Positions 4,024 to 60,165 of a stretch of 64,000 bases of DNA are shown one piece after another. The DNA is from Octopus bimaculoides (Eukaryota): the NCBI RefSeq assembly GCF_001194135.2, contig NC_069006.1, positions 17,783,036 through 17,847,035 on the forward strand, read 5' to 3'. Below the pieces are notes generated by a model. The model did no database searches. It had not been told where the DNA came from and worked only from the letters and a program-made list of their open reading frames with translations. Numbering within the stretch: the stretch's first letter is position 1; the number at the start of each line of letters is the position of its first letter. The translations under genes and the position numbers were made by a program.

Positions 4024-4226
4024 CTCTTTTTACCTGTTTCAGTCATTTGACTGTGGCCATGCTGGAGCACCGCCTTTTTAGTCAAGCAAATCGACCCCAG
4101 GATTTATTCTTTGTAAGCCTAGTACTTATTCTATCGGTCTCTTTTGCCGAACCGCTAAGTTACGGGGACATAAACACACCAGCATCGGTTGTCAGGCGAT
4201 GTTGGGGGACAAACACAGACACACAA

Positions 4227-4257
<31 letters not shown>

Positions 4258-4445
4258 TACATACATACATATACATATATACGACGGGCTTCTGTCAGTT
4301 TCCGTCTACCAAATCCACTCACAAGGCTTTGGTCGGCCCGAGGCTATAGTAGAAGACACTTACCCAAGGTGCCACGCAGTGGGACTGAACCCGGAACCAT
4401 GTGGCTGGTAAGCAAGCTACTTACCACACAGCCACTCCTGCGCCT
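4024..4445 (-). mobile_element. tRNA-derived SINE family A (most abundant), young full-length copy
   Basis: On the minus strand: head with A box (GGCTGTGTGGTAAG) and B box (GGTTCAGTCCC), internal (TA/TG)n tract, tail ...CCAGCATGGCCACAGTCAAATGACTGAAAC. Nearly identical to copies at 34608, 45961 and 49690. Confidence 0.9.
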
Positions 4446-7166
4446 ATGCTTATCTTTATTTGTGTGTGTGTTCATAGATATAGATACATACTAGGTGCTT
4501 GTTTGTATATGTATGTATGTATAAAATATACTGGCATATACATACTGCAAGCTCTCAAGTCTCATTAATACTCGCTCGCACTTTGCTTATGTTTATTCTC
4601 CTTAATTAAATACCTCCAGAAATTTCAATTGATCTATGTAGTGTTTTAGATACAAACTCCAGCGATAGGGTTTCAATTTCTCGTTCAGGTCCAAGCATGA
4701 TCGCTTAATCATTCAGTGGGCATCAGATATTTGTGTACAGAGGAAGGGAAGTCTGGCTTAGAAATTGTCTCAGATCAACCCTGAGTTCCCGCCGTGACCA
4801 TCTTACCTTTTGTTTTCAAACGAGCAGCTTCATGTTTCGAATGTAGATTGTGTGTGTGTGTGAGAGAGGGAGAGAGAAGATGAGAAACATGCAGATAGAT
4901 AGATAGACAGACAGACAGGTAGATAGATAGATGGATGGACGGGTAGGCAGACAGGTAGATAGATAGGCAGATAGATAGATAGATAAGGTTGTGTTCCGAA
5001 GGTCCTGCTTGGAAACAGCAATGGTGTTGAGAGAGAGTTTTGACTGTTATTTCTAAGAGAACTCCGGTGAACAGTTTCGTATGTTGGTTTTCGGTACACT
5101 TGACACTGCTAAAGAAACGCTTCAACGCCGCCGAATCTCGTGCTTATATCTAGGTCCTAGATCTCACATTTGTGTGAAGGGCAGAAAATTGTTATTCGAT
5201 ATGTATATTTATATGTATGTTTGTATATGTATATCTACTACACACGTATGTATACATATATTTGGTCAAGGCAGTGTATTTTAACGTCTGTTTTTATGTA
5301 GTGTTATTTGCATGTATGTATAGATGTGTGTATATAAACAAACATGGGCTGAAGGATCTACTCAACACATTTTAAGTAGGGCGTCACATTTATTTGTTGA
5401 AGAAAACCGTTGACAGTGACTTCATGAAATTTCGCCGGTTGTTGGCTTCGAAGTCGCTGTCAACCTTTTTTCCTTGTAAAAATAAATTATTATACAAAGA
5501 CACATACGGATGTATTTTCTTTTGTAGAATCTACAAAAAACAAAAAACAAAAAAAAAACATTAAACGATTAGCTTAGAGCTATGAAAATTATGTAGTCAA
5601 CGCGTGTGTGTGTACATATATGAATGTATATATGCTTGTGCGCGCGTGTGTATGCATATGTGTGCAGGTATATGTGCGTGTGTGTGCATCTGGATCTATG
5701 AGTTTGTATGTGTGTGTGTGTGTGTGTATAGATAACACCCACACACACACCTGTCTTGTATTTATGTGTTTATAATGTCTGTTTCTATGTACATAATGCG
5801 TGTATATTGAAAGAAATCCTTGTGTTCACAACAAATCGTTTGTGCTTCTTTCAGTAGACAGTATCAAGCTATGTAGCTGTCGACTTGTTTTGTAGTGCTG
5901 TCAGCCTTTTAAGAGCGAGCAGCTCTGTGAGAGCTAGTGGCATTAGCAGCAGCAGTGGTAGCGGTGTCAGTAGGCAGAAGACTATCACATTGGCTCACTG
6001 ACTTGCGACTCCCTCACTCGCTCTCTCCTCTTACCATCACTCCCCTTCTCGCACTTGGCTGCGGCCACTTACACCAGTGAATTAGCGCGCCAATTAACGT
6101 AGCAGATGTGTGTGTGTGTATGTGTGTGTATTTTTGTTTAGACAAACACATACACACATCCCCGCGTGTATATAAAAACCACTTGTGTAGATACGTATGC
6201 GTGCGTGTGTATATGTAAGTATATATCCTTTACTTGTTTCAGGCATTACTGCGGCCAAGCTGGGGCACCTCCTTCTACGATACTAATTTTTTTAAAGTCT
6301 GGTGCTTATTCTGTCGATTTCTTTTGTGGAATCGCTAATTTATAGGGACGTTAGCAAACCAACACCGGTTGTTAAGCGGGGGTGAGTGACATGCACACAC
6401 ACACACACAAACGACGGGCTTCGTTTAGTTTCCGTCTACCTAATCTACTCATAGCTTTGGTCGGCCCAGTTGCTTTGCTGTAGGACTGAACCCAGAACAT
6501 TGCAGTTGTTGGACAAACTTCTTAACGCACAACCACGCCTGCGACTATCCATATATACATTTTTCAAATTTTGCCTTTCATTCTTGGATGTGGGGTGGGG
6601 TGGAAAAATACAACAATACCAACCAAGTATTAGGGTCAGCGTAATCGACTTGTCCCCAGCCTTTAAAACCTGCTGGCCTTGTGCCAAAATTAGAAAGTGG
6701 GGTTTTGTATTTGCCCTTCGTTCCTCCGGAGTCAGTCCATAAAATAAGATCTTGGGATCAGTGGTGTCTGCTACTTTTTCTCCCTCAAAACTCTTGGACT
6801 TAAATTAGAAACAAGTATTAGGGACAATATACTGTGTGTATGTGTGTATATATATATCTGTATATACACACATATCCTCATGTATTGCTATGTATGTATG
6901 TGTATGTATATATATAACGCCTAGTTTAGAATAGAGGCAGCTGATGAAGGAATAATTCCAAGTGGCTATTTGTTTTCCTATGTGTTCGTTCCGTTGTCTG
7001 TAGTCCATTTTTCGAACGTCCTGTACCCGAATATGCATCTATATACACATGTAGATGTAAGTATGTACATATATGTGTGTATACATGCTTATATATCCTT
7101 TGTATTTTGCCTGGCGTGCTAATGATTCTGCCAGCTCGCCACTCTACATCCATTATAATATAGGCC

Positions 7167-8338: not shown

Positions 8339-8456
8339 AGTTACCTTTACTAACCATCTCCAATACTACAGCTAGCTACCTCTCATTATTACCACTCTCA
8401 CTACTATCTCCAACTCTACAGCCAACTATTATTATTATTATTATTATTATTATTTA

Positions 8457-8925
8457 AGGTGGCAAGCTGGCAAAATCGTTAGCATGCCAGGAAAAATGCT
8501 TCGTGGTATTTCATCTGCAGCTACGTTCTGAGTTCAAATTCCACTGAGGTCGACTTTGCCATTCATAACCCTAACCCTAACCCATCCTTTCAGGGTCGAT
8601 AAATTAAGTATCAATCAAGTACTGGGGTCGATGTAATTGACTATCCCCCTCCCCACAAATTCTAGACCTTGTGCCTATAATAGAAAGGATTATTATTATT
8701 ATTGTTATTAGGGGCGAGCTGGCAGAGTCGTTGGCATTCTGGGCAAAATGCTTAATGGTTTTTCATTCATCTTTACAGCTCTGAGTTCAAATTCCACCAG
8801 GGTTGACTTTGCCTTTCATCCTTTCAGGGTCAATAAGTACCGGTTGAACACTGGGGTCAATGTAATCAACTTATCCCCCATCCCTGAATTTGCTGGTCTT
8901 GTGCCAAAATGTGAAATCATTATTA
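8457..8925 (+). mobile_element. SINE family B, two head-to-tail copies
   Basis: GGCRAGCTGGCAGAATCGTTAGCA head, TGAGTTCAAATTCC B box, central GCCTTTCATCCTTTCRGGGTCGATAAATTAAGTACCAG block (resembles the Deu/Nin-type SINE domain, from memory), (ATT)n tail. Confidence 0.85.
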
Positions 8926-9487
8926 TTGTTGTTGTTGTTGTTGTTGTTGTTATTATTATTACTGAGTGAGAAACCAGTGCATGCCATCAAAGTGACACTG
9001 GGCCACAAATATACAAAGCCCAGTATACCCATCATGACTACCTGTCTGATAAGGGTACACTAGGCACATGCATCACAACCATATGTGCACAACATGGTGA
9101 TCTTATATCACGATAAACCATGCATGACCTTGCAGGTGGAGCCTAGTTAGAATTTTCTTCAGGTCGAGTAGCCCATCCTGCTCAAAAGGTTCCTGAATAA
9201 GATTTAAGGATAATGAATGAAGCACACATGTTTCCAGAGACACCAAAGAATTCCTTGCAATATATGGCTATGATGCTCCCCAACTACTCCTGCTCCTGAT
9301 CAGAAATGCACATATCGTCAGCCACTAAGGGACATGCTCAACTGGTTACAGTTAAACAATTGACAAGAAAATCTGTTGGTATTGAGCAGAATATTTGCTG
9401 TAACCCATCTTTTACACCAAAACAAAACATGTACATGATAACACTTCCAATCAGTTAAGACCAAAAGTCATGAGAGCCACTGTTGCT

Positions 9488-12920: not shown

Positions 12921-13301
12921 ACAAAATATGCTTCAACACATGGTCTCACATTAACAATCTTGCAAACCAAATTCAAAAACGAAATATATATATATATATA
13001 TATATATATATGGAGAGAGAGAGGTGTACTAAAATGTCACTTAGTAGCTTGCTGTAAAGCATTAGTTGTTTTACTGCTGGTAAAACAACAAGCAGTAAAT
13101 TTAGGCTGAGATGTTGTCGCAGTTGGAAGTCTTTCTGGGGGTGTGGTGACCTTATGTCTAGGCTTCTGATGCGCCCTTGGTATATTACTGCTACTTTAAC
13201 AGAAGGTTTCAAGTCAACAGCAGTGAAAGGCAACTGAACTGTAAATGATTCATGTGGTGCCAGTTTGGTGCCTTATGGGTTAGATTATCATTAAGGCAAC
13301 A

Positions 13302-13720
13302 AGCTAGCAGAATTGTTAGCATGCTAGGCAAAATACTTAGCAGCATTTTGTCTGTCTTTACTTTTTGAGTTCAAATTCCGCCTAGGTTGACTTTGCCTTT
13401 CATCTTTTCAGAGTTGATAAAATAAGTACCAGTCAAGATCAATGTAATTAATGTCATCCCAAGTCTTCAAAGCAGCTGCCCTTGTGCCAAAATTCGAAAC
13501 CATTATTATTATTATTATAGCAGCGATCTGGCAGAATCATTAGCACATCAGGCAAAATGCTTAGCAGCATGTTGTTCATCATTACATTCTGAGTTCAAAT
13601 TTCGCCAATGTCAACTCTGCCTTTCATCATTGCAAGTATGAGTTTCACACTGGGGCCCCGGTGTAATTGACTAGCTCCACTCCCCCAAAAATTTCAGGCC
13701 TTGTGCTTGTAGTAGAAAAT

Positions 13721-13755
<35 letters not shown>

Positions 13756-16091: not shown

Positions 16092-16882
16092 NNNNNNNNN
16101 NNNNNNNNNNNNNNNNNNNNNNNNNNNNNNNNNNNNNNNNNNNNNNNNNNNNNNNNNNNNNNNNNNNNNNNNNNNNNNNNNNNNNNNNNNNNNNNNNNNN
16201 NNNNNNNNNNNNNNNNNNNNNNNNNNNNNNNNNNNNNNNNNNNNNNNNNNNNNNNNNNNNNNNNNNNNNNNNNNNNNNNNNNNNNNNNNNNNNNNNNNNN
16301 NNNNNNNNNNNNNNNNNNNNNNNNNNNNNNNNNNNNNNNNNNNNNNNNNNNNNNNNNNNNNNNNNNNNNNNNNNNNNNNNNNNNNNNNNNNNNNNNNNNN
16401 NNNNNNNNNNNNNNNNNNNNNNNNNNNNNNNNNNNNNNNNNNNNNNNNNNNNNNNNNNNNNNNNNNNNNNNNNNNNNNNNNNNNNNNNNNNNNNNNNNNN
16501 NNNNNNNNNNNNNNNNNNNNNNNNNNNNNNNNNNNNNNNNNNNNNNNNNNNNNNNNNNNNNNNNNNNNNNNNNNNNNNNNNNNNNNNNNNNNNNNNNNNN
16601 NNNNNNNNNNNNNNNNNNNNNNNNNNNNNNNNNNNNNNNNNNNNNNNNNNNNNNNNNNNNNNNNNNNNNNNNNNNNNNNNNNNNNNNNNNNNNNNNNNNN
16701 NNNNNNNNNNNNNNNNNNNNNNNNNNNNNNNNNNNNNNNNNNNNNNNNNNNNNNNNNNNNNNNNNNNNNNNNNNNNNNNNNNNNNNNNNNNNNNNNNNNN
16801 NNNNNNNNNNNNNNNNNNNNNNNNNNNNNNNNNNNNNNNNNNNNNNNNNNNNNNNNNNNNNNNNNNNNNNNNNNNNNNNNNN
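16092..16882. other. Assembly gap (N-run)
   Basis: Run of N. The other gaps are 19254-19477, 22799-23008, 28782-28791, 31557-32356, 40938-41501, 42611-42651, 46274-46380, 47511-47722, 53587-53802 and 63156-63249. Confidence 1.
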
Positions 16883-17001: not shown

Positions 17002-17060
<59 letters not shown>

Positions 17061-17970
17061 ATATATACAACGGGCTTCTTTCAGTTTCCATCTACCAAAT
17101 CCACTCAAGGCTTTGGTCGACCTGAGAATATTAGTAGAAGACACTTGCCCAAGATGTCACACAGTGGGACTGAACCTGGAACCATGTGGTTGGGAAGCAA
17201 GTTTCTTACCACACAGCCACTCATGGCCATGCTGGGGCATTGCCTTGAAGGGTTTTTTAAGCCGAATGAATCAACCCCGGTACTTGTTTCTTTTTTAAGC
17301 CTGGTTCTTATTCTGTCAGTCTCTTTTTGCCAAACCACTAAGTTACAGAGACATAAACGAACTATGTGTGCATGTATATATATATGTATATGTGTGTGTG
17401 TATGCATGTATGTTTGTCCCTTACCACTGCTGACAACCAGTGTTGGTTTGTTTATGTCCCTTGGCGAAAGAGACTGATAGAATAAGTAACAGGCTCTAAA
17501 AATAAGTACTGCTATTGATTTGTTCTACTAAACCCTTCAAAGTGATGCCCCAGCATGACCACTACTGTTAGAAGACTGAAGGAAATAAAGAAGGATTTGT
17601 CTGATGGCCACCCTCTGTGATTCGCTCCTTTGTTCAGCAACTAATTGCATGGGGAAGCGAAGTAAAAGCCAAGTCATTAAGAAAATATCTCATGATGAAA
17701 TTGTTTTAATCATATTCCTGTTTATTGGGCAACACCTCCACCCTCCGTTCCTTTTGCTATTTCTTTTTAATTGACTCCGAAGTACATTGCAACATCATAT
17801 TTCATATTTTACACTTGTTTGTCGGATGTTGTTGATAGAAATATTACCAGCCACCAGGTAGCTGTAGCAGTGTTGTAGTGATGGTTCTGTGGTGGTGACG
17901 GTGGCGGCGGCTCTGGTAGTGTTGTGGTAGATCTGTGTGTGTGTGTGTGTGTATTTGTGTTCAGTAGGTG

Positions 17971-23389: not shown

Positions 23390-24050
23390 AGTTGCTGGCA
23401 GAATCGTTAGCACACCAGGAAAATGCTTAGTGGCATTTCATCCATCCTTACGTTCTGAGTTCAAATTTCACTGTGGTCAACTTTCCTTTCATCCTTTTCA
23501 GATCAATAAATTAAGTACCAGTGGAGTACTGTGTCGATGTATTCAACTTAAGCTCTTCCTCAAAATTTGAGGCCTTGTACCTATAGTAGAAAGGATTATT
23601 ACTATTATTATTGGTAAGCTGGCAGAATCATTAGCATGCTGGGCAAAATGCTTTTGTAGCATTTTGTCCATCTTCACGTTCTGAGTTCAAATTCCACCAA
23701 GGTCAACTTTGCCTTCCATCTTTTTGGGGCTGATAAAATAAGTACCAGTTCAGTATTGGGTTTTATATCACTGACTTGTACCCTTCCTCAGAATTGCTGG
23801 CCTTGTGCCAAAATTTGAAACCATTACTATTATTATTATTATTATATCCATGGATAAGGCAATGGATTGGCAACATTGTTAGAGTATTGGATCAAATGCT
23901 TAGCAGTATTTCTTCCAGCATTTGCATTCTGAATTCTGTCAAGATGTAGTCTTTCAACCCTTTGAAGTTGTTGAAGTACAATACTAGTCAAGTACTTGAG
24001 GTTGAGGGTATTGTGTAACCACCTCCCCTTAAAATTGCTGACCGTGTGCC
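23390..24050 (+). mobile_element. SINE family B train of three copies (an inverted copy lies at about 23060-23265)
   Basis: Three head / B box / central block units, each ending in an (ATT)n tail. Confidence 0.75.
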
Positions 24051-24540: not shown

Positions 24541-26079
24541 TTAACATCTCTGTAGAACTATCCACCAGCACCATATGAAACCCTGCAGTAGTAGATCTAT
24601 TATCATTACGAAACGATAAACTTTTAAGTTTAATCTCACATAAAGCACTGTGCTGTCTTAACCTCCCACCTCTTTACCACAATGATTTACATTTCTTTTC
24701 ATGTTTTTCTTCTCTTCACATCTCTTTTTTCTTTCTGTCATTCTTTTGTGTTTGTAATCAGTTCTGTGGGAATAGACAGTCCAGTCAGCTGTACAATTAA
24801 TAGCTCATAGTTACTGATTCACTGGAAATCTTCAGAGACAAACTTATCTAAGGCGTCATCAGTAGTTTATAGAGAAAATGTTGTCATCATCATGATATAA
24901 TATTAAATATCCTTGAAGGATTTGGCAGAAAACTAGTGAAGAGTACTGTCTCAAACCATTGATTTCTTTTCCTGCCTTTTTGATGTATGTGGTTGCTTCT
25001 AACCCCTCTCCCTCTCTCCTTCTCTCTCTCTCTCTCTCTGTCTCTCTGACCTTTGCCATGATTATTCTATAAATTGATGTACATTGTTTTTTAATTTGCT
25101 ACCTTAATCCAAATGTAAATGTCATTTTATGTCAATATCTTGTATTTGGGACAGTTATATGGTCTCTGTATTAGTGTAGTGGCAGAAGTTGGGGGTGATG
25201 TAGGGAGTTATATTGATTAGTGGTGAGGGGGAGGAGTGCACAATGTGGTTGTTTTTGCGTTTGTTTTGTTTTTAATCACCTTAGCATCTGTTCATCCACC
25301 CACCCACCCCCCGTCCATACATATAGGTGCAGGTGTGGCTGTGTGGTAAGAGGCTTACTTCACAACCACATAGTTCTGTATTCAGTTCCACTGCACGGCA
25401 CCTTGGGCCAGTGCCTTCTACTATAACCTCAGGCTGATCTATGCTTTGAATGGATTTGGTAGACAGAAACTGAAAGAAGCCTGTCATGTACGTGTGTCTG
25501 TGTTTGTCCCCCGCCACTGCTTGACAACTTGTGTTGGTGTGTTTATGTCCCTGTAACTTAGCAGTTTGGCAAAAGAAACTGATAGAATAAGTACCAGGCT
25601 TTAAAGAATAAGTATTGAGGTTGACTCATTCAACAAAAAATTCCTCAAGGTGGTGCCCCAACATGATGGCAGTCTAATTACTGAAACAAGTAAAAGATAA
25701 AGATACATTCCTCCAAATATACTTCAGTGCTATTTGAAGGCCATATTGTTCTTTTAGCCCTAGGTTCCACCCTGACCCAGCAGAACTATGAGGGAAAGTA
25801 TTATAGCCAAGACTCCTTCACTCCTTTAGGACTAAATGAGCTGATCCAATGTATCTTTCTGATTTGAGGGAGATTTCTTTGCATTACTTATACTCCCTTC
25901 TGCCCCCTCCCCCCACACACATCTATATATTGCAGGTTCAGTTAATAGTATCCACTATGGTACTGAAATGTGATTGGCTAGATATTTTCTCCTATTGTTC
26001 AACTATGTTATGTCTCTAGCTGTTTGTGACAGTCAAACATTTATTATTCCATCCATCTTTTTTGCCTGCTGTACTTTGG

Positions 26080-26385
26080 AGAGTCTTAGAGCTAGAGTCC
26101 TTGGGTACCACCTTGTCCATAGGGTCCTATCAGAAGCAATCATCATTAGACTCTTCAGCTGGATTCCCAAATGTGACCAACTGAGGCTATGGATATTATC
26201 TAACCATCTTGTTCTTGGTCTACCCCTAGGTCTCCTGCCACTTGGCTCATCTTGAAGAATTCATCTTGCAATTCTTTCCTGCTACATTCTAATCACATAT
26301 CCACAGTACCAGAACCGTGACCTCTCAAGTGCAAAGAAGTTAGCAGCTTGACCTGGAGAAACTCCCTGCTCTCTGAGCTATGCAT
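26080..26385 (-). mobile_element. RTE-clade LINE ORF2 3' end, decayed
   Basis: Minus-strand translation ...QERIAR*ILQDEPSGRRPRGRPRTRWLDNI... matches the G-R-R-P-R-G-R-P-x-x-R-W C-terminal signature of RTE elements. Contains in-frame stops. Confidence 0.8.
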
Positions 26386-29864: not shown

Positions 29865-30520
29865 AGCATGCCGGGCAAAATGCTTAGCAGTATTTCACCT
29901 GTCCTTATATCCTACGTTCAAATTCCACCATGGTCCAGTTTCCCTTTCATCCTTTCAGAGTCAGTAAAGTACCAGTGAAACACTGGGGTCGATGTCATCA
30001 ACTAGACCCCTTCCCCGCAAAATTTCAGGCCTTGTGCCCATGGTGGAAAGGATAATTATTATTATTATGGTTGCAGGCTGGGAGAATTGTTAGCACACCA
30101 GATGACAGATGAAATGCTAAGTGGTATTTTCGTTCATCTTTAGGATCTGAGTTAAAATTCCGCCAAGGTTGAATTTGGACTTTTGTCCTTTCAGGGTCAA
30201 TATAATAGGTACTAGTTGAGCACTGAGACAGGGGGGGGGGTCAATGTAATCAACTTACCCACTGCCCTTGGGCCAAAATTTAAATTTATACTCTAAGTAG
30301 TGGTGGGAAGGCAACTTACTTTATTGGATCTCTGTTCTATGTTCAGATGCTGCCAAGGTTGACTTGGCCTTTCATCCTTTCAGGGTCAATCAATTAAGTA
30401 CCAGTTGAGTACTGGGGTTGATGTAGTCAACTAGCCCTCTCCGCCAAAATTTCAGACCTTATGCCTTTAGTAGAAAGGATTATTATTATTATTGTTATTA
30501 TTGAAAGCAGCAAGCTGGCA
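29865..30520 (+). mobile_element. SINE family B train of three copies plus a fragment
   Basis: Repeated family B units separated by (ATT)n tails. Confidence 0.75.
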
Positions 30521-30840
30521 GAATCTGGTGAGAATTGGTGATGGGAAGAGCGTCCAGTCATAGAAAATCTGCATTAATAAACTCTTTTGGACCGATGCAA
30601 GTGTGGAAAAGAAAAGTAGATGCTACATGATGATGATCATAATATTTATATTGGAGTTGGTACACTTCACTCTAACTTCTTCTGTGGAAAGCTTGTTGTT
30701 GTGTCTAGCCATGAGAAACCATAGCAGAAAATTATAGTCTGAGATATTCCAAGATTTCCAAAAGAAAGAAAGACAAAATTAATTCCAAACATTATTGAAT
30801 GACTCAGATTTTCAACAATTCAAAGCAATTTTTACTATTC

Positions 30841-30871
30841 TTTATTTTTCTTCTTCTCTTTTTAGGTAAGT
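30841..30871 (+). promoter_or_regulatory. Juxtaposed 3' and 5' splice sites (candidate recursive splice site)
   Basis: tttatttttcttcttctctttttag|gtaagt: long pyrimidine tract, AG at 30864-30865, consensus donor GTAAGT at 30866-30871. Confidence 0.5.
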
Positions 30872-31290
30872 TCAATAGTTGTAACAGACGTTGGGTGGAT
30901 ATTTTACCATGGCTAACTGAATGGAACCAGTACCAGGTTTGACGGTTCTTTTGTAAACTATTTTAGTGTGTTGTCATATATATATATGTGTGTCTGTGGC
31001 CTAGAGGTCTGAAACACAGACCTGGAAATACAAGATCACAAAAAGAATGACCCGGGTTTAGATCCTGCTGGAGACAGGATTTTGGAAAGCAGTAGGGACA
31101 CACGTAGGAGTTATGACCTGGATGGGCCTGGCTCCCATAGAGTACCAGGAATAAGGGCCAAAACACTTATTGGATGAGAGTTCTTCCACTGAAGATCTCT
31201 CCTGCTGTGTGCTTGCCTTACAGCAAGTTTCTGGTATATATATATATTTGGAAATGTGCTGTGCGTGAGAAGACCCGGCAAGCCAAGTAA

Positions 31291-31500
31291 GATCGTTGCC
31301 AGTGCCCCTGGACTGGTTCTTGTGCGGGTGGCACATGAGATGCACCATTTTGAGCGTGGCCGTTGCCAGTACTGCCTGACTGGCTCCTGTAGGATTTTCG
31401 AACGAGATCGTTGCCAGTGCCCCTGGACTGGCTTGTGCGGGTGGCACATAAAAGACACCATTTCGAGCGTGGCCGTTTTCGTGCGGGTGACACGTAAAAG
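31291..31500 (+). repeat. Internal tandem duplication inside the RTE-derived element
   Basis: gatcgttgccagtgcccctggactgg...gtgcgggtggcacat...caccattt.gagcgtggccgtt occurs twice (about 31291 and 31408), plus a partial third copy. Confidence 0.8.
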
Positions 31501-32820
31501 CACCCACTACACTCTCTGAGTGGTTGGCGTTAGGAAGGGCATCCAGCTGTAGAAACNNNNNNNNNNNNNNNNNNNNNNNNNNNNNNNNNNNNNNNNNNNN
31601 NNNNNNNNNNNNNNNNNNNNNNNNNNNNNNNNNNNNNNNNNNNNNNNNNNNNNNNNNNNNNNNNNNNNNNNNNNNNNNNNNNNNNNNNNNNNNNNNNNNN
31701 NNNNNNNNNNNNNNNNNNNNNNNNNNNNNNNNNNNNNNNNNNNNNNNNNNNNNNNNNNNNNNNNNNNNNNNNNNNNNNNNNNNNNNNNNNNNNNNNNNNN
31801 NNNNNNNNNNNNNNNNNNNNNNNNNNNNNNNNNNNNNNNNNNNNNNNNNNNNNNNNNNNNNNNNNNNNNNNNNNNNNNNNNNNNNNNNNNNNNNNNNNNN
31901 NNNNNNNNNNNNNNNNNNNNNNNNNNNNNNNNNNNNNNNNNNNNNNNNNNNNNNNNNNNNNNNNNNNNNNNNNNNNNNNNNNNNNNNNNNNNNNNNNNNN
32001 NNNNNNNNNNNNNNNNNNNNNNNNNNNNNNNNNNNNNNNNNNNNNNNNNNNNNNNNNNNNNNNNNNNNNNNNNNNNNNNNNNNNNNNNNNNNNNNNNNNN
32101 NNNNNNNNNNNNNNNNNNNNNNNNNNNNNNNNNNNNNNNNNNNNNNNNNNNNNNNNNNNNNNNNNNNNNNNNNNNNNNNNNNNNNNNNNNNNNNNNNNNN
32201 NNNNNNNNNNNNNNNNNNNNNNNNNNNNNNNNNNNNNNNNNNNNNNNNNNNNNNNNNNNNNNNNNNNNNNNNNNNNNNNNNNNNNNNNNNNNNNNNNNNN
32301 NNNNNNNNNNNNNNNNNNNNNNNNNNNNNNNNNNNNNNNNNNNNNNNNNNNNNNNNCTATATTTTGAATGAAGACTCCTTTTCACAACATCTTTCTAATG
32401 AAATGCACTGTTTATTTATTTCAATTAATTTTGAAAATAATCGAAAATTTGCAAAAATTTTGTAAAAAACAAAAAAACAAAACAAAAAAAAAAACAAAGG
32501 AAAAAACCATTTTTCCCTTGATTAAAGGCAGCATTTGGAATGGTTCATTTGTTCTTAGGTCTAATTTTTTGCAAGCTAGTATGGCTTTGATAAGAATTCT
32601 TGTGGTTATATTGATGATCTTCTTAATACCAACCCTTTCTTGTTTCCAAGTGAGGTACTTATTCTGCAGGCCTGTGCACATCGTTACTAAACTGCTAGAC
32701 ATATTACATGGAACATCAACAACACCACCACAGTCAAAACAATACCAGTGTAAGACATATACACACACAGACACACACACACACATACAGCATTCTGTAT
32801 ACCTTATTTAGCATGAATAA

Positions 32821-33440: not shown

Positions 33441-33472
<32 letters not shown>

Positions 33473-33802
33473 CATATATATATCATGTTGGAGCAAATTG
33501 ACCCCAGAGCTTATTCTTTGTAAGCGTCGTACTTATTCTGTCAGGGACGCAAACACACCAGCATCGGTTGTCAAGTGATGCTGGGGGGACAAACAGACAC
33601 ACAAACATATACACACATACATATATATATATATATATACACATATACGACAGGCTTCTTCCAGTTTCCGTTTACCAAATCCACTCACAAGGCTTTTGTC
33701 TGCCCAAGGCTATTGTAGAAACACTTGCCCAAGGTACCACGCAGTGGGACTGAACCTGGAACCATGTGGTTGGTAAGCAAGCTATTTACCACACAGCCAC
33801 TC

Positions 33803-34607: not shown

Positions 34608-34814
34608 CTCTTTTACTTGTTTCAGTCATTTGACTGCGGCCATGCTGGAGCACCGCCTTTAGTTGAGCAAATCGACCCCAGGACTTATTCTTTGGAAGCC
34701 TAGTACTTGTTCTATCGGTCTCTTTTGCCGAACCACTAAGTTACGGGGACGTAAACACTCCAGCATCGGTTGTCAAGCGATGTTGGGGGGACAAACACAG
34801 ACACATAAACATAC

Positions 34815-34877
<63 letters not shown>

Positions 34878-35043
34878 TACGACAGGCTTCTTTCAGTTTC
34901 CGTCTACCAAATCCACTCACAAGGCTTTGGTCGGCCCGAGGTTATAGTGGAAGACACTTGCCCAAGGTGCTATGCAGTGGGAATGAACCCGGAACCATGT
35001 GGTTGGTAAGCAAGCTACTTACCACACAGCCACTCCTGCGCCT
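34608..35043 (-). mobile_element. SINE family A, young full-length copy
   Basis: Near-identical to 4024-4445, CpGs intact. Confidence 0.9.
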
Positions 35044-36499
35044 ATATATATATATCCAGCTGTAAAAACCATACCAAAGCAGACCTTGCCAGTGCTGGTG
35101 CCATGTAAAAAACACCCAGGCCACCCTGTAAAGTGGTTGGTGTGTTAGGAAGGGTATCCAGCTATAAAAACCATGCCTTAACTGACCTCTTTTATTCCAC
35201 TTGTTGCTACATGTCAAACTGCTGACTCAGTGTCAAAATATACAGTAACACATGTCATTGAGACACACAAGCTCTCACACTACAACAAGGGCCAGGCAAT
35301 GTAACCTTCATGTATGCTCTGTGCTCTCAGTGGAGTATAGGCCATTGACCACTTTCCTCACCGGTTTTTGACTCTCAGGCCTTGTTGGTTTCAAATTGTC
35401 ATTGACACTTTTGTAAGTTTCCTTTTTTCTCTAGGTAGGGATGTTGGCCCTAAGCAAACATTTTCTTTTTACCTCTGGGATGATGTGGTCTGCATTAATC
35501 TTGTCTCTTGATCTACTCAATGTAGCAGCTAACTGCAGGGGGAACTACACTACCTAGAAAGGGGGTTTCTGTGTTTTTTATTAATCCTCTCAGTAGCTGT
35601 TTAATTTGCATCAACAAAAATACTTCCTAAAGATTTTAAAATGAGGTTCCTATACTCTAAGTCATGCTTATTAGACATCGTCTGCCCAATAGAGTTGGCC
35701 CTCCACTGCTAGCAATATAAATTTCAAATTTTGGCACAAGACCAGCAATTCTGGGGAAGGGTGTAAGTCAGTTACATCAGCTTCAGTACTCAACTGATAT
35801 TTAGTTTATCAACCTTGAAAGGATGATCTTGGCAGAATATGAACTCAAAATACGAAGATGGATGAATTACTGCTAAGCATTTTGTTCAGCATGCTAATGA
35901 TTCTGCCAGCTTGTCACCTTACTACAAATATAAATTTAACATTTCATTCAATCAGCTGTCTTCATTTCTGTCTTGTAGTGGTGGCCACTCACCAAACACA
36001 AATTATTGCCCTACTCCGGTCTTCTCTGGATCACCTTAAAATGGGGTACAAAGTAACCAATTTTTATCTCAGTGTGTGTTTCTATCGATTGAGCATATAT
36101 ATACATCTGTATACATCATTCCAACAGTTGTTTATGGCCAAGATATTCTTTATAGGAAACCATTTCTTTTAAGAGCTTAACCTTTCACCGGTGGTAAATA
36201 TTAAATGTAATGTATATATTTACTGCGCATTGATAAGATGCACTCTATCACCGCAGCATCAGCATGTGAATGCGGACAGATAGTGCATTATTATAACAGC
36301 ATTGTAGAGTAGAGCTGAGTTGGTGGGTGTTGTTGTTGTTATTGAAATGCTCTAAAATATCAGCTGCTGTGCACCAGCAAGTGCAAAACTCCAGCGCATA
36401 TTGCATCTTGTTTGGCAAAGAGCAGAAGAAAAAAAACATATGAATTATAGAAAGAATTTGTGTTTTGATGTATTGCGTTGAAAATGGAGGGAGCAACCC

Positions 36500-40880: not shown

Positions 40881-42328
40881 GCCGTGTGGTTAATTAGCTC
40901 GCTCGACAATCATGTTTCGGGGGTTCGATCCTAGTGCNNNNNNNNNNNNNNNNNNNNNNNNNNNNNNNNNNNNNNNNNNNNNNNNNNNNNNNNNNNNNNN
41001 NNNNNNNNNNNNNNNNNNNNNNNNNNNNNNNNNNNNNNNNNNNNNNNNNNNNNNNNNNNNNNNNNNNNNNNNNNNNNNNNNNNNNNNNNNNNNNNNNNNN
41101 NNNNNNNNNNNNNNNNNNNNNNNNNNNNNNNNNNNNNNNNNNNNNNNNNNNNNNNNNNNNNNNNNNNNNNNNNNNNNNNNNNNNNNNNNNNNNNNNNNNN
41201 NNNNNNNNNNNNNNNNNNNNNNNNNNNNNNNNNNNNNNNNNNNNNNNNNNNNNNNNNNNNNNNNNNNNNNNNNNNNNNNNNNNNNNNNNNNNNNNNNNNN
41301 NNNNNNNNNNNNNNNNNNNNNNNNNNNNNNNNNNNNNNNNNNNNNNNNNNNNNNNNNNNNNNNNNNNNNNNNNNNNNNNNNNNNNNNNNNNNNNNNNNNN
41401 NNNNNNNNNNNNNNNNNNNNNNNNNNNNNNNNNNNNNNNNNNNNNNNNNNNNNNNNNNNNNNNNNNNNNNNNNNNNNNNNNNNNNNNNNNNNNNNNNNNN
41501 NNTATTGCCAGAAACAACAGCTAAGTTTCTTTTTCTAAAATTTTACATAGTTCAACCGACACACCTGAATGTGTGATGAACAAAAGAATTTTGAAAACAG
41601 TAGGTATAAAACTAATTTCTAAACACCAAATGGCTATGGGGGTTTCACTAGAATAAAATTGTAACTAAAGGGGTCCATAGATAAAAAAAAAAAAAAAGTT
41701 AAGCACTGGTTACATGTGGCAGACACAGTTTGGTGATTTAGCTCCAGGTCAGCTCTGGCCGAACAGACGAATGCTCCACCTGTGATCATCCTCTCACTCA
41801 CTTTTGTAATGCATGACCACGTTTATGTGTTATGTCTTAGCTTTTTAAAGACGTCAGAGCTTGATAGGAATGAGATTTCGTTGCTACTCCTAGCAGGTCG
41901 CGGTCTAGTTCCAAATAGATTTTTATCACATCCTGTTAGGCTAATACTACATATCTGCGACGCGTTAGTAGTGAGAGACTCGGGATCGATCCCCAGCACA
42001 GGTCACTTCTACTGCTGCAACTATTCCTAGATTAAACGCCATACCTTTTAAATCTGATCCGTTTTTGAGATCTAATCTGTGATTGAGATGGAATAGATCC
42101 CCTTTTTGTCTTTTCAGTCATTGGATTTGCGGCTATGCTGGGCACTCTGCTTTCAAGGGTTTAATCGAATTAATCGATCCCAGTACCTTTTTGTTTGTTG
42201 TTGTTCTAAGCCTGGTACTTATTCTATCAGTTTCTTTCGCCGAACCGCTAGATGACGGGGGTCACAAACCAGCCAACACCGGTTGTCAAGCGTTGGTGAG
42301 GGACAAACATGCGGTCACACTCACACAC

Positions 42329-49689: not shown

Positions 49690-49902
49690 CTCTTTTACTT
49701 GTTTCAGTCATTTGACTGCAGCCATGCTGGAGCACCGCCTTTAGTCGAGCAAATCGACCCCAGGACTTATTCTTTGTAAGTCTAGTACTTATTCTATCGG
49801 GCTCTTTTGCCGAACCGCAAAGTTACGGGGATCTAAACACACCACCATCGGTTGTCAAGCGATGTTGGGGGGACAAACACAGACACACAAACATATACAC
49901 AG

Positions 49903-49940
<38 letters not shown>

Positions 49941-50063
49941 GACAGGCTTCTTTCAGTTTCCGTCTACCAAATCCACTCACAAGGCTTTGGTCGGCCCGAG
50001 GCTATAGTAGAAGACACTTACCCAAGGTACCACGCAGTGGGAAAGAACCCGGAACCATGTGTT
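49690..50063 (-). mobile_element. SINE family A, young 5'-truncated copy
   Basis: Near-identical to 4024-4445. Confidence 0.9.
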
Positions 50064-50752
50064 TGAAGCACTTTTTTTTTTCCGCGCGTAAAAAATGCAC
50101 TTGTTCCAGTGCCATGTGCCAGTGCCACAAACATGCACCCATACCAGTTGAAAATAGAAAGCCCTTGGCACACTTCGTAAAGTGGTTGGTGTGAGGAAGA
50201 GCATCCAGCTGTGGAAACCATGCCAACACAGACAAACGGAGCCTGGGCAGCTCCCCAGCCTTGCCAGCTCCTGTCAAACTGTCCAACCCATGCCAGCATG
50301 GAAAATGGATATTAAACGATGAAGATGATGATTTTGGTTCTACCGGCTCCACCTCCTCGATTGTACTGTATAATAAAGAAGCTCCATGTTTCTTTCTTCT
50401 TCACTCTGACATGGAGGCCATCATCTCCTATTTGTGCAACATGGATGGCTTGGTGTTCTCTCTCCTCTTACAGTCTCTTTCCGCCAACTCCACTATCTCA
50501 CTCAGCACATAATGATGAGTGGCAGTGTCACAATAACCATCCATATATTTTTGACAGTATGTTGTTTCCTGATGTGACACTAGCCATGTAATTTCAAGAT
50601 CAACCCCACCCCCTTCTCTCCCTCTCTCTCTCACACACTGTGCCACACTATATATAAAAATCAATTACAACAGTTGCTCCACTGCTCTTCCTCCTGTCTC
50701 TAAGATTACAATTGATTTTTTTTTTTTTGGTTCTTTCTTTCTTTCAGCTGTT

Positions 50753-52568: not shown

Positions 52569-52640
52569 AATCGAGCAAATAGATCCTAGTACTTATTATA
52601 TCAGTCTCGTTTTGCTGAACTGCTAAATTATAGAGATGTG

Positions 52641-52789
52641 GCTGAGTGGTAAGAAGCTTGCTTCCCAACCACATTGTTCTGGATTCGTTCCCACTGCGTG
52701 GCACTTTGGGCGAGTGTCTTCTGCTATAGCCTCAGGCTGACCAAAGTCTTATGAGTGGTTTTGGCAGGCGGAAACTGAAAGAAGCCTGT

Positions 52790-52847
<58 letters not shown>

Positions 52848-53445
52848 TGTGTATGTGTGTGACTTGTCCCCCACCACCACTTGGCAACCAGTGTTAGTGT
52901 GTTTATGTCCTTGTAACTTAGTAGTTCAGCAAATGAGACCAATAGAAATTAAAATACTTCAAGCTGGTGCCCCAGCAAGGCCACAGTCTAATGACTGAAA
53001 CAAACAGAAGATACACACACATACACACATATAAAGTGTAGGTGTAGCAAGTGTGGCTGTGTGGTAAGAAGCTTGCTTCCCAACCACATGGTTTGGGTTC
53101 AGTCCTACTGCATGACCCTTTGAACAAGTATCATCTACTGCAGCCCCAGGCTGACCAAAGCATTGTGAGTGGATTTGTAGATAGAAACTGAAAGAAGCCC
53201 ATCGTATTTGTATGTGTGTCTGTGAATGTATCTTTGTGCCTTTGGTGTCTGTTGCCCACCACCACCACTTGACAACCGGTGTTGGTTTGTTTACATCCCT
53301 GTAATTCAGCAGTTCAGCAAAAGAAGCCGATAGGATAAGTATCAGGCTTAAAAATAAGTACCGGGCTGAATCTGTTTGACTAAACCCTTTAAGGCAGTGC
53401 CCCAGCATGGCCACTGTCCAATGACTAAAACAAGTAAATGTAAAA
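52641..53445 (+). mobile_element. Two tandem SINE family A copies
   Basis: Heads near 52641 and 53052, each with the full body and the gaaacaa tail. Confidence 0.8.
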
Positions 53446-53994: not shown

Positions 53995-54524
53995 CCAGCA
54001 TCACTACAGTCTACAGCACTCCTTGTCATTGTACTATTGCTACCAATAATGACCTACAATAGTAATAATACACCCCTCCCTTAAAAAGAGGAAGATGAGG
54101 TGGTCACGGCTGGAATGTCTTTGATCATAGGTTTGCTTGATCAGGGCTGACCCGGAGCGAAACTACCACAACACTAGCAGTAGTTCCATCAGGGCCACTA
54201 CCAGCGTCACATTCAGCAGTAGCAACAATAACACTCTCACCTCCCACCACCACTACTAATGCTACTACTACTACTACAACCACCAGCACCACCACCACCA
54301 CCACTACAAACACCACCGTCAACACACTGGCAACACTACCACTGCCACCGCCACTTTTGGTAATACAGCTACCAACACCACGACTACCATCTCTGACAAC
54401 AATACTCTCCCCGCTACCATCAGCACCACCGTCACCTTCAGCAGCGATAGTACTACTACTACTAATACTACCACTCTAGTGAGACAAACACTGAAGTAGC
54501 ATTTCTGACAGCCATCCATTTGGT

Positions 54525-54572
<48 letters not shown>

Positions 54573-54902
54573 AGCTAGCAACAGTAGCAGCAGCTGTAAA
54601 AAGTAATTCCACTGTCGAAGGCTACTACTCTCAGACGGGATGGGCAAGGATGTAATTAATGCCTTTAATCACTGGTTGCTTAGTCCGGGTACACCGAGGG
54701 CTAAAACAACAGCTACCTCTGACAATGGGGGAACCCTCAATCTCTTGAGAAGAGAAGAAAAAAATTAAAAAAACAAACAAATACATTGTATAATGTAGCT
54801 CTCTGCTGGGCTGGTCATGACTGGTGTGTCTTTGTTCAAAAGTCTGTTTGGCAGGTTTGACTTGCGGTTAAACAACAGCTACTACTAACAGCAGTAATAA
54901 TT

Positions 54903-54935
<33 letters not shown>

Positions 54936-55679
54936 TCAGCAGATTTGCTGCAACTGTATGTAGATCTGAATGTCTCGTACAGCTGGTCGTGGTGGTGGTA
55001 GTGGTCATAGATTTAGTGGTTATTGAAGTAGAGGTGGTAGTAGTGCTGGTCATAGATCTAGTGGTTCTTATTACTGTAGTAGTAGTAGTAGTAGTAGTAG
55101 TAGTAAGGGTAATAGAACTGGTGATTGTAGTGGTTATGTCTTTATAGCCATAGATTTAGTGTTTGTAGGAGTAAAAGTGGTAGTAGTGGCCATGTCTTGT
55201 AGTGGTTGTGAAGGTAGCAGAGCTTGAGGTTGTTGTGGTAGTGCAGTTAGTGGTTGTGGCAGTGGTGGGTTTGGTGGTATAATGGTGTCTGTGGTAGTAA
55301 CGCAGTGGTCGTCGTCGTGGCGGCGCTACTTGTTCCAGCTGTAGTTTGTTGTCAGACATACAGTTGACGGTGGTGATGATTTTCTGAGATGGCATAGCTG
55401 TGGTGGACGTAGTACCGGTTGTGGTGGTTGGTTGTTGTGGTTGCAGATCTAGTAGTAAGCAGCAATCTCTGTCCACCTTCTGCACACGCATACATGCACA
55501 AGCACGAACACATACACACACACACATGTACATACACACAATATGGAGACTTGGCGATTGAGGAAGTGTGTAGTCTTCTGTACAGATAGGTCTACCTCTT
55601 CTCCGCCTCCTCCTCTTCCCACTTCTCTCTCCTGCTCTCCTCCTCATCCCTCTCCTCTTTTGTAATCACAGTTACTCAC

Positions 55680-55893
55680 CCTCCTCCTCCTCCTCCTCTT
55701 TTATCTTGTTTCTCAGCCATCACAAAAGACTTTTTATTGATTCAATTCCTCCTCACCATGCTGCTACTATTACTACTACTACTACTGTTACTACTACTGC
55801 TACTACTACTACTACCACTATTATCACCACCACCACCACCACCACCTCAGTTCTGTCTTGCAGCAGAGAAAGTGGATAGGAAGATAGCAAACT
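55680..55893 (-). other. Candidate alternative first exon on the minus strand (could encode MAEKQDKRGGGGG)
   Basis: TCAGTT initiator-like motif at 55895-55890, trinucleotide-rich leader, ATG at 55720, donor GG|gtgagt at 55679. Confidence 0.25.
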
Positions 55894-56205
55894 GATGAGA
55901 CAGCTGTGTATTTGTATAGATGTGTGTATGTGTGTGTGTATCTGTGTATGTGAATGTTTGTATGTGTGTGTGTGTGTGTGTGTGAATGTTTGTGTGTGTA
56001 TCTGTATGCACATATATCTGTGCATGTATCTAGGCATATATGTGTGTTTGTGTGTATGTGTTACGTACATACGTTTGTATGTGTACCTAGACATGTGTAT
56101 GTGTTCGGTCTATGTTACACCTCAGCCTTTATCAATTTGATCCACAACAGCTTCCGTTTACATCATGCAGTGTGTTGACTGCACTGCTGCAGTGTCTATA
56201 TAATA

Positions 56206-57560: not shown

Positions 57561-59764
57561 TTATGTTTTACTTGTTTCAGTCATTAGACTGTGGCCATGC
57601 TGGGGCACCACCTTGAAATTTTCGTCAAATGAATCAACTCCAGTACTATTTTTTAAAGTCTTATTGGTCCCCCAGGGGCTTTAGCAGAAGATACTTGACC
57701 AAGGTGCCATGCAGTAGGGCTGAACCTGAAACAAAGTGGTTGGTTACCTTTACATTCTGTTTCTGAAAAAAATCAAAAAAAAATAATTGATCTTAGGCCT
57801 GTTCATTCAGACTTGTCCCAGGGCTAAACAGCAAAATTAATATCGATAACAGAGAACAGTCTGGGATCAAGCTAGCATTGTGACCTTAGTCAAAATATGT
57901 TTATTGCTGTTCAACTTTGATCTCACTTTCTTCCCTTCTTTCCTCTCCTTTCTTCTCTCTTTCTCTCTCTCTCTCTCTCTCCATACACAGACACACATAT
58001 TCATCTTTTTATTTTTCTTCTGTGTAACAGAAATCAATGAGAAATAGGTTTCACATTACTGAATTTCATGATACAGAAGGATGCAATACTTCTGTAGTGT
58101 AAGAGATACCTGTGTATATGTTTGTGTGTGTGTGTGAAGATACATGGTCTCACAATTGTGAGATTGTGGTTTCAATTCTCAGACCAGCTGCATATTGTGT
58201 TCTTGAGTGAAACACTTTGTTCCATGTTGCCCCAGTCCACTAAGCCGTAAATGGGTAACCCTGCAATGGGTACCTATTTACAGCTGAGTAAGCATCACAG
58301 GCCAACCTTCCCCATCCTGATTAGGGAATCTAATTGACTGGCCCCACTCCCCCAAAATTTCGGGCCTTGTGCCTAGAGTAGAAAACAATGTTTACAACAC
58401 TCAAGCTGCTTTTAGTTCATAATTGAATACACACACACACTGTTTATGATGCTTAAATATTATAAATGTATAACAGAACATAAATGAATAATTAACAGTT
58501 TCATGACTTTTGGGCCCCCTTATGTATATATATATTTTTTGTTTTTTCCCTGTTTTTGCTCTGGAATTTGCCTGTGTGTAGATGTATGTATGTATGTATG
58601 TATGTATGATGGTATAATTTGTGATAGTCTCACAGCTCACTGCTTTTCGTCCTGTTCTGTCACCCTGTTCAACTTATACTCTGTCTCTGAACCCAGATGC
58701 CATATACCCCTACAAAAAAAAAACAAAAGTAAAGCAAAAACAAATTGCATGGGACTTCTCTCAAGATATCCAACATTCTAGAGAAACCCATTTCAAGAAC
58801 ATTGCAGACGAAGCAAAAGAGAGGAATTTCTACCGATAGTGATGAAAATTAGTTTGGTTATTTTCAGCATTGCAGAGTTGAACTCTGTCAGCTGCCACAC
58901 ACACACATCATCATGTGTGTGCTTAGCTAATGTTGTATGTGTGTATGTATACATACATTTATTCTTAACTCCTTTCAAGCTCCTATCACTTTTGCTCATT
59001 TCTATTCATTTTTCTCTCTCACTGCTTTGGCCCAACTTAACTTGTCTATTTTTATAGTATCTTAAATATATGTTTTCTTCGGCTGTACTTACTGCATATG
59101 CCAGATATATTCTGGAGAGAGAGAGAGAGAGAGAGAGCAGAGAGCAGAGACTGTGTGTGTGTATGTGTGGTGAATGAGAGTTGAAACCATTATGTAGAAT
59201 ATCTTACTGACTGTGCATTTCATAGCGAGATGATTGTAATCTTTAATGGGTATTCAATATGTCAATGTTAGTCTCTATATACATACATACATACACATAC
59301 GCTCATACAATGTGTTTGAGGGTAGTTATGTAACACCTCATGGGGCATATGAATAAATTCTATACTGTTGTATAAGAGAGCTGAGCTAAATATATATATA
59401 TATTCTAACATGTTGTGTATGTTTATTTCATACATTAAAAATATAATAGTAGTCATTCATACTCACTTATACTGAAAGTGTGTGTAGAGAGAGAGTGAGA
59501 GGGAGATGAATCCCTTCTTAGTCCACTACATTACTGCTGTTTCAGCAGCTACTGAAGCTGCTGAATTTTTGTGTAGGATGTTGCTATGTGTTTAAAAGTT
59601 AACACCATGAAGAAATTATATGAAACCAGTGGTACAGTCCATTTACACATTGCTTATAATCAAACACATACATACATGCATACACTCATGCAGATCTACA
59701 TATATGCATACATACATACACACATACATATATACATACATACACATACATATCTTTTATTTTT

Positions 59765-60165
59765 ATCTTTCACTTGCTTCAGTCATTAGATTACAGCCAT
59801 GCTGGAGCACCCCCTGGGAGAACTTTTAGTTGAATGAATTAACCCCAGTACTTATTTTTTAAAGCTTGGTACTTATTCTATCAGTCTCTTTTGCCGGACT
59901 GCTAAGTTATGGAGACGTAAACACACCAGTACCAGTTGTCAAGCAGTGGTGGGGGTGACAAACAGAGACTCAAAGACACGTACACTCAGATATATATATA
60001 TATATATATATATTGCATGGGCTTTTTTCTGTTTCCGTCTACCAAATCCACTCACAAGACCTTGGTTGGCCCTGGGCTATAGTAGAAGACATTTGCCCAA
60101 GGTTCCACACAGTGGGACTGTGGTTGGGAAGCAAACTTCTTACCTCACAGCCACACCTGTGCCTA
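59765..60165 (-). mobile_element. SINE family A, older copy. Others lie near 150, 6230, 11290, 15920, 17060, 18045, 18280, 19540, 25325, 33490, 39550, 42105, 46440 and 48150
   Basis: Family A head, body and tail motifs with substitutions. Confidence 0.8.

What the first reader, a model, noticed from the sequence alone, without database searches (positions are those of the whole stretch)
30841..30942. Textbook recursive splice site (ratchet point) with a putative 71-nt RS-exon
Seen: about 23 nt of nearly pure pyrimidine, AG, then directly GTAAGT (junction 30865/30866), in unique sequence. A second donor-like CAG|gtttga at 30937 would define a 71-nt exon that is open in phase 1 (xKFNSCNRRWVDILPWLTEWNQYQ). 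Known: AG|GTRAGT junctions mediate stepwise removal of very long introns in Drosophila and vertebrates, and use a downstream cryptic RS-exon. I know of no characterised cephalopod example, but could not check the literature.
Basis: partly seen in the sequence, partly recalled or inferred. Interest (0 to 1): 0.7.

Follow-up and report, generated by a model that had tools for sequence, protein, structure and literature searches.

The report
Recursive-splice-site look-alike, function unproven
The sequence really does contain a near-perfect "acceptor fused to donor" splice motif, but no gene, downstream exon signal, conservation or RNA evidence could be found, so it is most likely a chance look-alike.

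Summary
A 23-nt tract with 22 pyrimidines (30841-30863) is followed by AG (30864-30865) and then GTAAGT (30866-30871). It lies in sequence that is unique within the window. It is the only AG|GTRAGT on either strand and by far the best of the 386 AG|GT junctions. Chance predicts about 0.003-0.03 such sites per 64 kb. In a genome of about 2.8 Gb that still means roughly 100-1300 chance copies.

The "71-nt RS-exon" adds nothing. CAG|GTTTGA is a weak donor, and 58% of random + strand positions have an equal or better one 30-150 nt downstream. One open frame out of three is also expected.

I found no host gene. About 14,900 aa of filtered ORFs from both strands gave no protein match, ten long ORFs gave no credible Pfam domain, and Rfam gave no family. 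Strand, intron membership, conservation and RNA support all stay untested, and so does the cephalopod origin.

Most likely this is a fortuitous motif in T-rich non-coding DNA (about 0.65). A working recursive splice site is not excluded (about 0.1). That would need a + strand intron longer than 64 kb.

The parts
30526..30975 (.). Segment holding the motif. It is single-copy within the window and lies between a multi-copy interspersed repeat (29865-30525) and further single-copy and duplicated sequence.
   Evidence: Self-blastn
30831..30835 (+). Candidate branch point TTTAC (yUnAy), with the A at 30834, 31 nt before the acceptor G
   Evidence: Carries little information in AT-rich DNA.
30841..30845 (+). 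Second candidate branch point TTTAT, with the A at 30844, 21 nt before the acceptor G
30841..30863 (+). Polypyrimidine tract, 22 of 23 pyrimidines, including (TTC)3 and TT at -5/-6
   Evidence: Only 10 of 7,503 AG sites on both strands have an equal or better acceptor-side score.
30864..30865 (+). Acceptor-like AG. There is no other AG in the preceding 38 nt (the nearest AG upstream is at 30824-30825).
30866..30871 (+). Donor-like GTAAGT placed directly after the AG. AG|GTAAGT matches 8 of the 9 positions of the donor consensus.
   Evidence: One of 13 GTAAGT on the + strand.
30866..30936 (+). It is open in one phase only, its length is not a multiple of three, and it has no protein relative.
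30937..30942 (+). Weak donor-like GTTTGA after CAG (score -0.5), which is at the level of random sequence

Best explanation
The site is a fortuitous juxtaposition. A T-rich, (TTC)-containing low-complexity tract, of a kind common on the + strand of this window, happens to end in AG next to one of the window's GTAAGT hexamers. It lies in repeat-rich, gene-poor non-coding DNA. Most likely it is not used by the spliceosome, or at most it is used as occasional splicing noise if the + strand is transcribed. Shown here: the motif, its rarity per window, the absence of detectable genes, and the absence of a supporting downstream donor. Inferred: the lack of function.
For: (1) No coding exon or known RNA was detected on either strand of the 64 kb. 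Three searches of 4,955-4,965 aa each covered all + strand and most - strand non-repeat, non-low-complexity stop-to-stop ORFs of at least 30 aa, and none gave a hit at E<=1e-3. Ten long ORFs gave no credible Pfam domain; the only match was far below its curated cutoff (E 0.05, 14.5 bits against a cutoff of 35.3). There were no Rfam families and no tRNAs.
(2) In the annotated Octopus vulgaris genome the median intron is 2.5 kb and there are 8.36 genes per Mb (PMC10700109). An exon-free 64-kb window is therefore more likely intergenic than one giant intron.
(3) The downstream donor that an RS-exon needs is at the random level.
(4) Chance expectation is 0.003-0.03 per 64 kb. Scaled to about 2.8 Gb this gives on the order of 100-1300 equally good chance sites per genome, and this one was picked out by a scan.
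(5) The bare octamer is not enriched: 1 observed against 2-5 expected.
(6) In humans only about 10 fully efficient intronic recursive sites were found despite a far larger number of motif matches (PMC6224609; PMC8605326).
Against: The combined motif is very strong: 14.4 bits against 6.1 for the next best of 386 AG|GT sites. It carries the specific features of Drosophila ratchet points, namely a prominent pyrimidine tract, TT at -5/-6 (present in 99.5% of fly ratchet points) and an optimal GTAAGT. A strong recursive donor with a weaker downstream donor is the arrangement that gives silent removal of a cryptic RS-exon. An exon-free window of more than 64 kb is also what a very long intron looks like. 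The + strand has T>A (skew +0.06), as sense strands of introns often do. The negative gene search cannot see non-coding, UTR or very short exons, and I could not show that the database holds this organism's proteins.
Confidence: 0.65

Rival explanations
1. A working zero-nucleotide recursive splice site (ratchet point). The + strand would be the sense strand of an intron longer than 64 kb. U2AF and U2 recognise the tract and AG, and the upstream exon is ligated to 30866. [quoted passage not shown]
For: Full sequence match to the ratchet-point consensus, including TT at -5/-6. Branch-point candidates at -21 and -31, and no AG in the 38 nt before the acceptor AG. Rarity per window. A strong recursive donor paired with a weak RS-exon donor, and a length that would shift the frame, fit cryptic RS-exons. 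No exon within about 31 kb on either side is compatible with a very long intron. T>A on the + strand.
Against: No host gene or strand is known. The downstream donor is not better than random, whereas most fly recursive sites have a conserved donor less than 100 nt downstream. Introns longer than 64 kb are far above the octopus median of 2.5 kb. There are no conservation or RNA data. Hundreds of chance sites are expected per genome. Recursive splicing has never been shown in this group.
Confidence: 0.1
2. An ordinary splice site of an exon that was not detected, such as a lncRNA, UTR, cryptic or poison exon. Either the acceptor at 30865 opens an exon that happens to start with GTAAGT (an expressed 'RS-exon' type, common among annotated vertebrate exons), or GTAAGT at 30866 is simply the donor of an upstream non-coding exon.
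For: Each half is individually strong: the acceptor side is in the top 0.13% of AG sites and the donor side in the top 1% of GT sites. Thousands of annotated human exons begin with a donor-like sequence. Non-coding exons would escape the protein-based searches.
Against: No good donor lies within 250 nt downstream to close an exon; the best score is 1.0 at +238. No convincing acceptor with an open frame lies upstream. A 23-nt pyrimidine tract would be unusual as the end of an exon. There is no transcript evidence.
Confidence: 0.15
3. The motif is part of an interspersed repeat that has only one copy in this window. It would then recur across the genome by transposition rather than by selection or by independent chance.
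For: About 35% of the window is covered by repeats that recur within the window. The unique segment directly abuts family A, which has 13 loci.
Against: No second copy of 30526-30975 exists in 64 kb, while other families show 13 to more than 20 copies. There is no transposon protein domain nearby.
Confidence: 0.1

Closest known systems
Drosophila intronic ratchet points (Ubx, kuz, Bx, luna and others; 197 sites in 130 introns, Duff et al.)
   Same: Acceptor and donor are juxtaposed around AG|GT. The pyrimidine tract is very prominent, TT sits at -5/-6, and the donor is an optimal GTAAGT. The recursive donor is stronger than any donor just downstream. The candidate cryptic exon is short and would shift the frame.
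   Different: Fly ratchet points lie in known long introns, are ultraconserved, have a conserved donor usually less than 100 nt downstream, and are backed by junction, saw-tooth and lariat reads. None of this is established here, and the downstream donor is at chance level.
Vertebrate cryptic RS-exons in very long introns (CADM2 and about 9 others, Sibley et al. 2015, as cited in PMC6224609 and PMC8605326)
   Same: The same AG|GTAAGT logic, in a large, repeat-rich genome where long introns exist.
   Different: Vertebrate sites need a functional RS-exon donor for exon definition. Here it is weak (CAG|GTTTGA, -0.5). Only about 10 such sites were confirmed in humans against many motif matches, which shows that the motif alone predicts poorly.
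Annotated (expressed) RS-exons repressed by the exon junction complex (Blazquez et al. 2018, PMC6224609)
   Same: An exon that begins with a donor-like GTAAGT.
   Different: Those are real, mostly constitutive and mostly coding exons. The 71-nt stretch has no protein relative and no good 3' boundary.
Motif-predicted recursive site in the 230-kb intron of locust NPF1 (PMC8892266)
   Same: A prediction from the fly matrix in a non-model invertebrate with expanded introns.
   Different: The locust site lies in a known long intron and has some biochemical support from U2AF65 RNA immunoprecipitation. Here even the host gene is unknown.

Membership tests
Zero-nucleotide recursive splice site (ratchet point) | A strong 3' splice site (pyrimidine tract plus AG) placed directly before a strong 5' splice site (GTRAGT) | tested here: met
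   22/23 pyrimidines, then AG|GTAAGT. It is the best of 386 AG|GT junctions, 14.4 bits against 6.1 for the next.
Zero-nucleotide recursive splice site (ratchet point) | TT at positions -5 and -6 of the acceptor (196 of 197 fly ratchet points) | tested here: met
   The sequence reads ...CTTTTTAG|G, so -5 and -6 are both T. The criterion comes from the Duff preprint.
Zero-nucleotide recursive splice site (ratchet point) | Lies on the sense strand inside a long intron of a transcribed gene | tested here: inconclusive
   No exon or gene was found on either strand of the 64 kb. Strand composition is mixed: T>A but C>G on the + strand.
Zero-nucleotide recursive splice site (ratchet point) | A usable branch point and no intervening AG upstream of the acceptor | tested here: met
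   yUnAy matches with the A at -31 and -21, and no other AG in the 38 nt before the acceptor AG. This carries little information in AT-rich DNA.
RS-exon model (vertebrates, and flies per Joseph et al. 2018) | A downstream 5' splice site, usually less than 100 nt away, that defines a cryptic RS-exon and stands out from the background | tested here: inconclusive
   CAG|GTTTGA exists at +71 but scores -0.5. 58% of random + strand positions do as well within 30-150 nt, and the median best score is -0.12. The matrix is a generic one written from memory, not trained on this species.
Zero-nucleotide recursive splice site (ratchet point) | The junction is conserved well above flanking intron sequence | not testable with these tools
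   No related eukaryotic genomes are available. The metagenome scan for the 26-mer found nothing.
Zero-nucleotide recursive splice site (ratchet point) | RNA evidence: exon-to-ratchet-point junction reads, saw-tooth coverage, recursive lariats | not testable with these tools
Ordinary coding cassette exon | An open frame with protein homologues and a competent donor | tested here: not met
   The 47-aa ORF that holds it has only one spurious hit, to a tandem-repeat ORF, and nothing. The donor is weak.

The most novel reading that the evidence does not exclude
The site is a working ratchet point inside a + strand intron longer than 64 kb, in a gene with no exon in this window. That would suggest stepwise removal of giant introns arose or was retained alongside cephalopod intron expansion.
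Probability: 0.1. Interest if true: 0.55.

Novelty: not a real feature. Interest (0 to 1): 0.2.

Why it matters
If it were functional, it would extend recursive splicing beyond insects and vertebrates to a lineage that independently evolved large genomes, long neuronal genes and large brains. It would also give a concrete locus to test. As it stands it is a single motif match without a gene, so it mainly shows that the AG|GTAAGT motif alone predicts poorly in a gigabase-sized, T-rich, repeat-rich genome. The useful experiment is genome-wide (sense against antisense motif excess in long introns, plus total RNA-seq), not at this one locus.

Tried and rejected
(1) Exact-sequence look-ups of three window ORFs, including the 47-aa ORF spanning the putative RS-exon, to find the source contig or related assemblies. 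None is on record.
(2) Six-frame Pfam scan by DNA reference.
(3) One 16.8-kaa concatenated ORF query. I split it into three queries, and all were empty. About 1,800 aa of filtered - strand ORFs, ORFs under 30 aa, ORFs inside repeats and low-complexity ORFs were never searched.
(4) An exhaustive HMMER search of the 47-aa ORF gave one hit at E=1.9e-4. The hit is a tandem-repeat pseudo-protein matched in 6 stretches, so I rejected it as spurious.
(5) Pfam on ten long clean ORFs gave only a match far below its curated cutoff (CC2-LZ, E 0.05, 14.5 bits against 35.3).
(6) Rfam and tRNA scans, to find SINE heads or non-coding RNAs that might date or orient the region, found nothing.
(7) A metagenome scan for the 26-mer across the junction found nothing.
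(8) Strand-composition asymmetry as a proxy for transcription direction gave T>A but C>G, so I judged it uninformative.
(9) The repeat-orientation bias of family A (9 on +, 4 on -) cannot be interpreted without knowing the element's own polarity.
(10) One literature search with badly chosen terms returned only general cephalopod papers.

Full report
**What is there.** The + strand reads ...caatttttactattc TTTATTTTTCTTCTTCTCTTTTT AG|GTAAGT tcaatag.... The tract 30841-30863 has 22 pyrimidines out of 23. AG is at 30864-30865 and GTAAGT at 30866-30871. Exactly one of its three phases is open. Positions -5 and -6 are both T. yUnAy matches place candidate branch adenosines at -31 (30834) and -21 (30844). 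There is no other AG in the 38 nt before the acceptor AG. Self-alignment shows that 30526-31289 is single-copy within the window. It directly follows a copy (29865-30525) of a repeat family with 13 loci in the window.

**Is the junction more than chance?** It is the only AG|GTRAGT octamer on either strand. The bare octamer is not enriched, since Markov simulations of order 1-5 predict 2-5 per window. The coincidence lies in the octamer sitting behind a very strong pyrimidine tract.
- Windows with at least 19 of 20 pyrimidines make up 0.73% of + strand and 0.24% of - strand positions. This gives roughly 0.005-0.025 expected sites per window.
- Order-5 Markov simulations give 0.003-0.007.
- I scored all 386 AG|GT sites with a generic acceptor-plus-donor matrix (frequencies from memory, used for ranking only). 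This site scores 14.4 bits and the next best, 35434 on the + strand, scores 6.1. Randomly re-pairing acceptor and donor halves reaches the observed score in 1 of 148,996 pairs, or 0.0026 expected per window.

The junction is therefore genuinely unusual for 64 kb. Octopus genomes are about 2.8 Gb, judging from 23,423 genes at 8.36 genes per Mb (PMC10700109). At that scale the same rates predict on the order of 100-1300 equally good sites by chance, and this one was selected by a scan.

**The RS-exon.** No donor-like GT within 250 nt downstream is good. The scores are -0.5 at +71 (CAG|GTTTGA), -0.8 at +29, -0.2 at +122 and +141, and 1.0 at +238, against 6.6 for the ratchet donor in its genomic context. 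On the + strand, 58% of random positions have a donor scoring at least -0.5 within 30-150 nt, and the median best score is -0.12. The second donor, the 71-nt length and the single open phase therefore carry no information. In flies, most recursive sites are followed within 100 nt by a donor that is more conserved than other donor-like sequences (PMC6224609). In vertebrates the RS-exon donor is needed for exon definition. The absence of a distinct donor here counts mildly against function. On the other side, a strong ratchet donor paired with a weak RS-exon donor is the arrangement that gives complete skipping (PMC8605326).

**Gene context.** This is the decisive missing piece.
- Exact look-ups of three window ORFs found no record.
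- I extracted all stop-to-stop ORFs of at least 30 aa and removed those in intra-window repeats or with low complexity. I then searched about 14,900 aa in three concatenated queries against the 5.8-billion-protein collection. These covered all 7.7 kaa of the + strand set, including the ORF with the putative RS-exon, and about 7 of 8.8 kaa of the - strand set. Nothing scored E<=1e-3.
- An exhaustive search of the 47-aa ORF found only a tandem-repeat pseudo-protein, which is a spurious match.
- Ten long ORFs gave no credible Pfam domain; the only match was far below its curated cutoff. Rfam and tRNA scans were empty.

An identical exon of 35 aa or more from an annotated protein should have been seen. 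Short, UTR or non-coding exons would not, and I could not confirm that the organism's proteome is in the database. The window thus looks like gene-poor, repeat-rich DNA. About 35% is covered by intra-window repeats, microsatellites are frequent, and there are 11 assembly gaps. The median octopus intron is 2.5 kb, so an exon-free 64-kb window is more likely intergenic than one giant intron. Giant introns are, however, exactly where ratchet points live. Composition gives T>A (+0.06) but C>G (-0.04) on the + strand, so it does not orient the region. I could not verify the cephalopod origin with these tools.

**Weighing it.** I start from a prior of roughly one in four that a motif this strong is functional. 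Fly-like genomes would put it higher. Human-like genomes would put it much lower, with about 10 confirmed silent intronic sites against many motif matches. I discount for the random-level downstream donor and for the need for a + strand intron longer than 64 kb, and credit slightly the T>A skew. This leaves about 0.1 for a working recursive site. I give about 0.15 to some other splice use, such as an unannotated non-coding or cryptic exon. I give about 0.1 to an element-borne motif, and about 0.65 to a fortuitous and unused one.

**Comparison with what is known.** The site works like, or would work like, a Drosophila ratchet point or a vertebrate cryptic RS-exon. Of the defining features, the sequence ones are met. 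Position on the sense strand of a long intron and the downstream donor are inconclusive. Conservation and RNA evidence are untestable here. I therefore do not file it as a member. The held literature has no cephalopod or mollusc example. The nearest non-model case is a motif-predicted site in a known 230-kb locust intron, which has U2AF65 immunoprecipitation support.

**Verdict.** I score it low (0.2). A cheap check against the source annotation and public total RNA-seq would settle it.

Noticed in passing
window 16092-16882, 31557-32356, 40938-41502 and 8 smaller runs: Eleven runs of N totalling 3,270 bases, which indicates a draft scaffold. One 800-base gap starts only 0.7 kb downstream of the motif, so any feature there, including a possible exon, is invisible.
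   Followed up: partly
window 29865-30525 and 12 other loci (e.g. 8431-8943, 13284-13744, 23394-23845, 62223-62397): Interspersed repeat family with 13 loci at 72-90% identity, 9 on the + strand and 4 on the - strand. No protein domain, tRNA head or Rfam match was found. One copy ends 340 nt upstream of the junction.
   Followed up: partly
window 34663-35226, 4085-4447, 17015-17358, 33442-33802, 49747-50070, 59661-60170, 52638-53365(-) and others: A second, more abundant repeat family (more than 20 copies) carrying an internal TA/AC microsatellite. Its translations recur in the ORF list (FAEPLSYGD...RCWG...).
   Followed up: partly
window 31290-31364 and 31405-31477: A local direct duplication of about 75 nt at 91% identity, just downstream of the unique segment.
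   Followed up: no
window 54100-55900: About 1.8 kb of trinucleotide-type low complexity, giving long Thr/Val/Ser-rich ORFs on both strands. It has the highest G+C of the window (0.44).
   Followed up: no
window 26036-26260 (-): A 75-aa ORF with the stretch GRRPRGRPRTRWLDNI...DRTLWTRW. From memory this resembles the C-terminal tail of non-LTR retrotransposon ORF2 proteins. It has no Pfam or protein-database hit, so the resemblance is unconfirmed.
   Followed up: partly
window 35411-35442 (+): The second-best AG|GT junction in the window (tttccttttttctctag|GTAGGG, 6.1 bits). It lies 4.6 kb downstream on the same strand and is much weaker than the reported one.
   Followed up: no
whole window: GTRAGT hexamers number 28 on the + strand and 45 on the - strand. 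My own estimate from base composition gives about 30 and 35. T exceeds A on the + strand in nearly every 2-kb bin. The strand asymmetries are mild and of unknown cause.
   Followed up: partly
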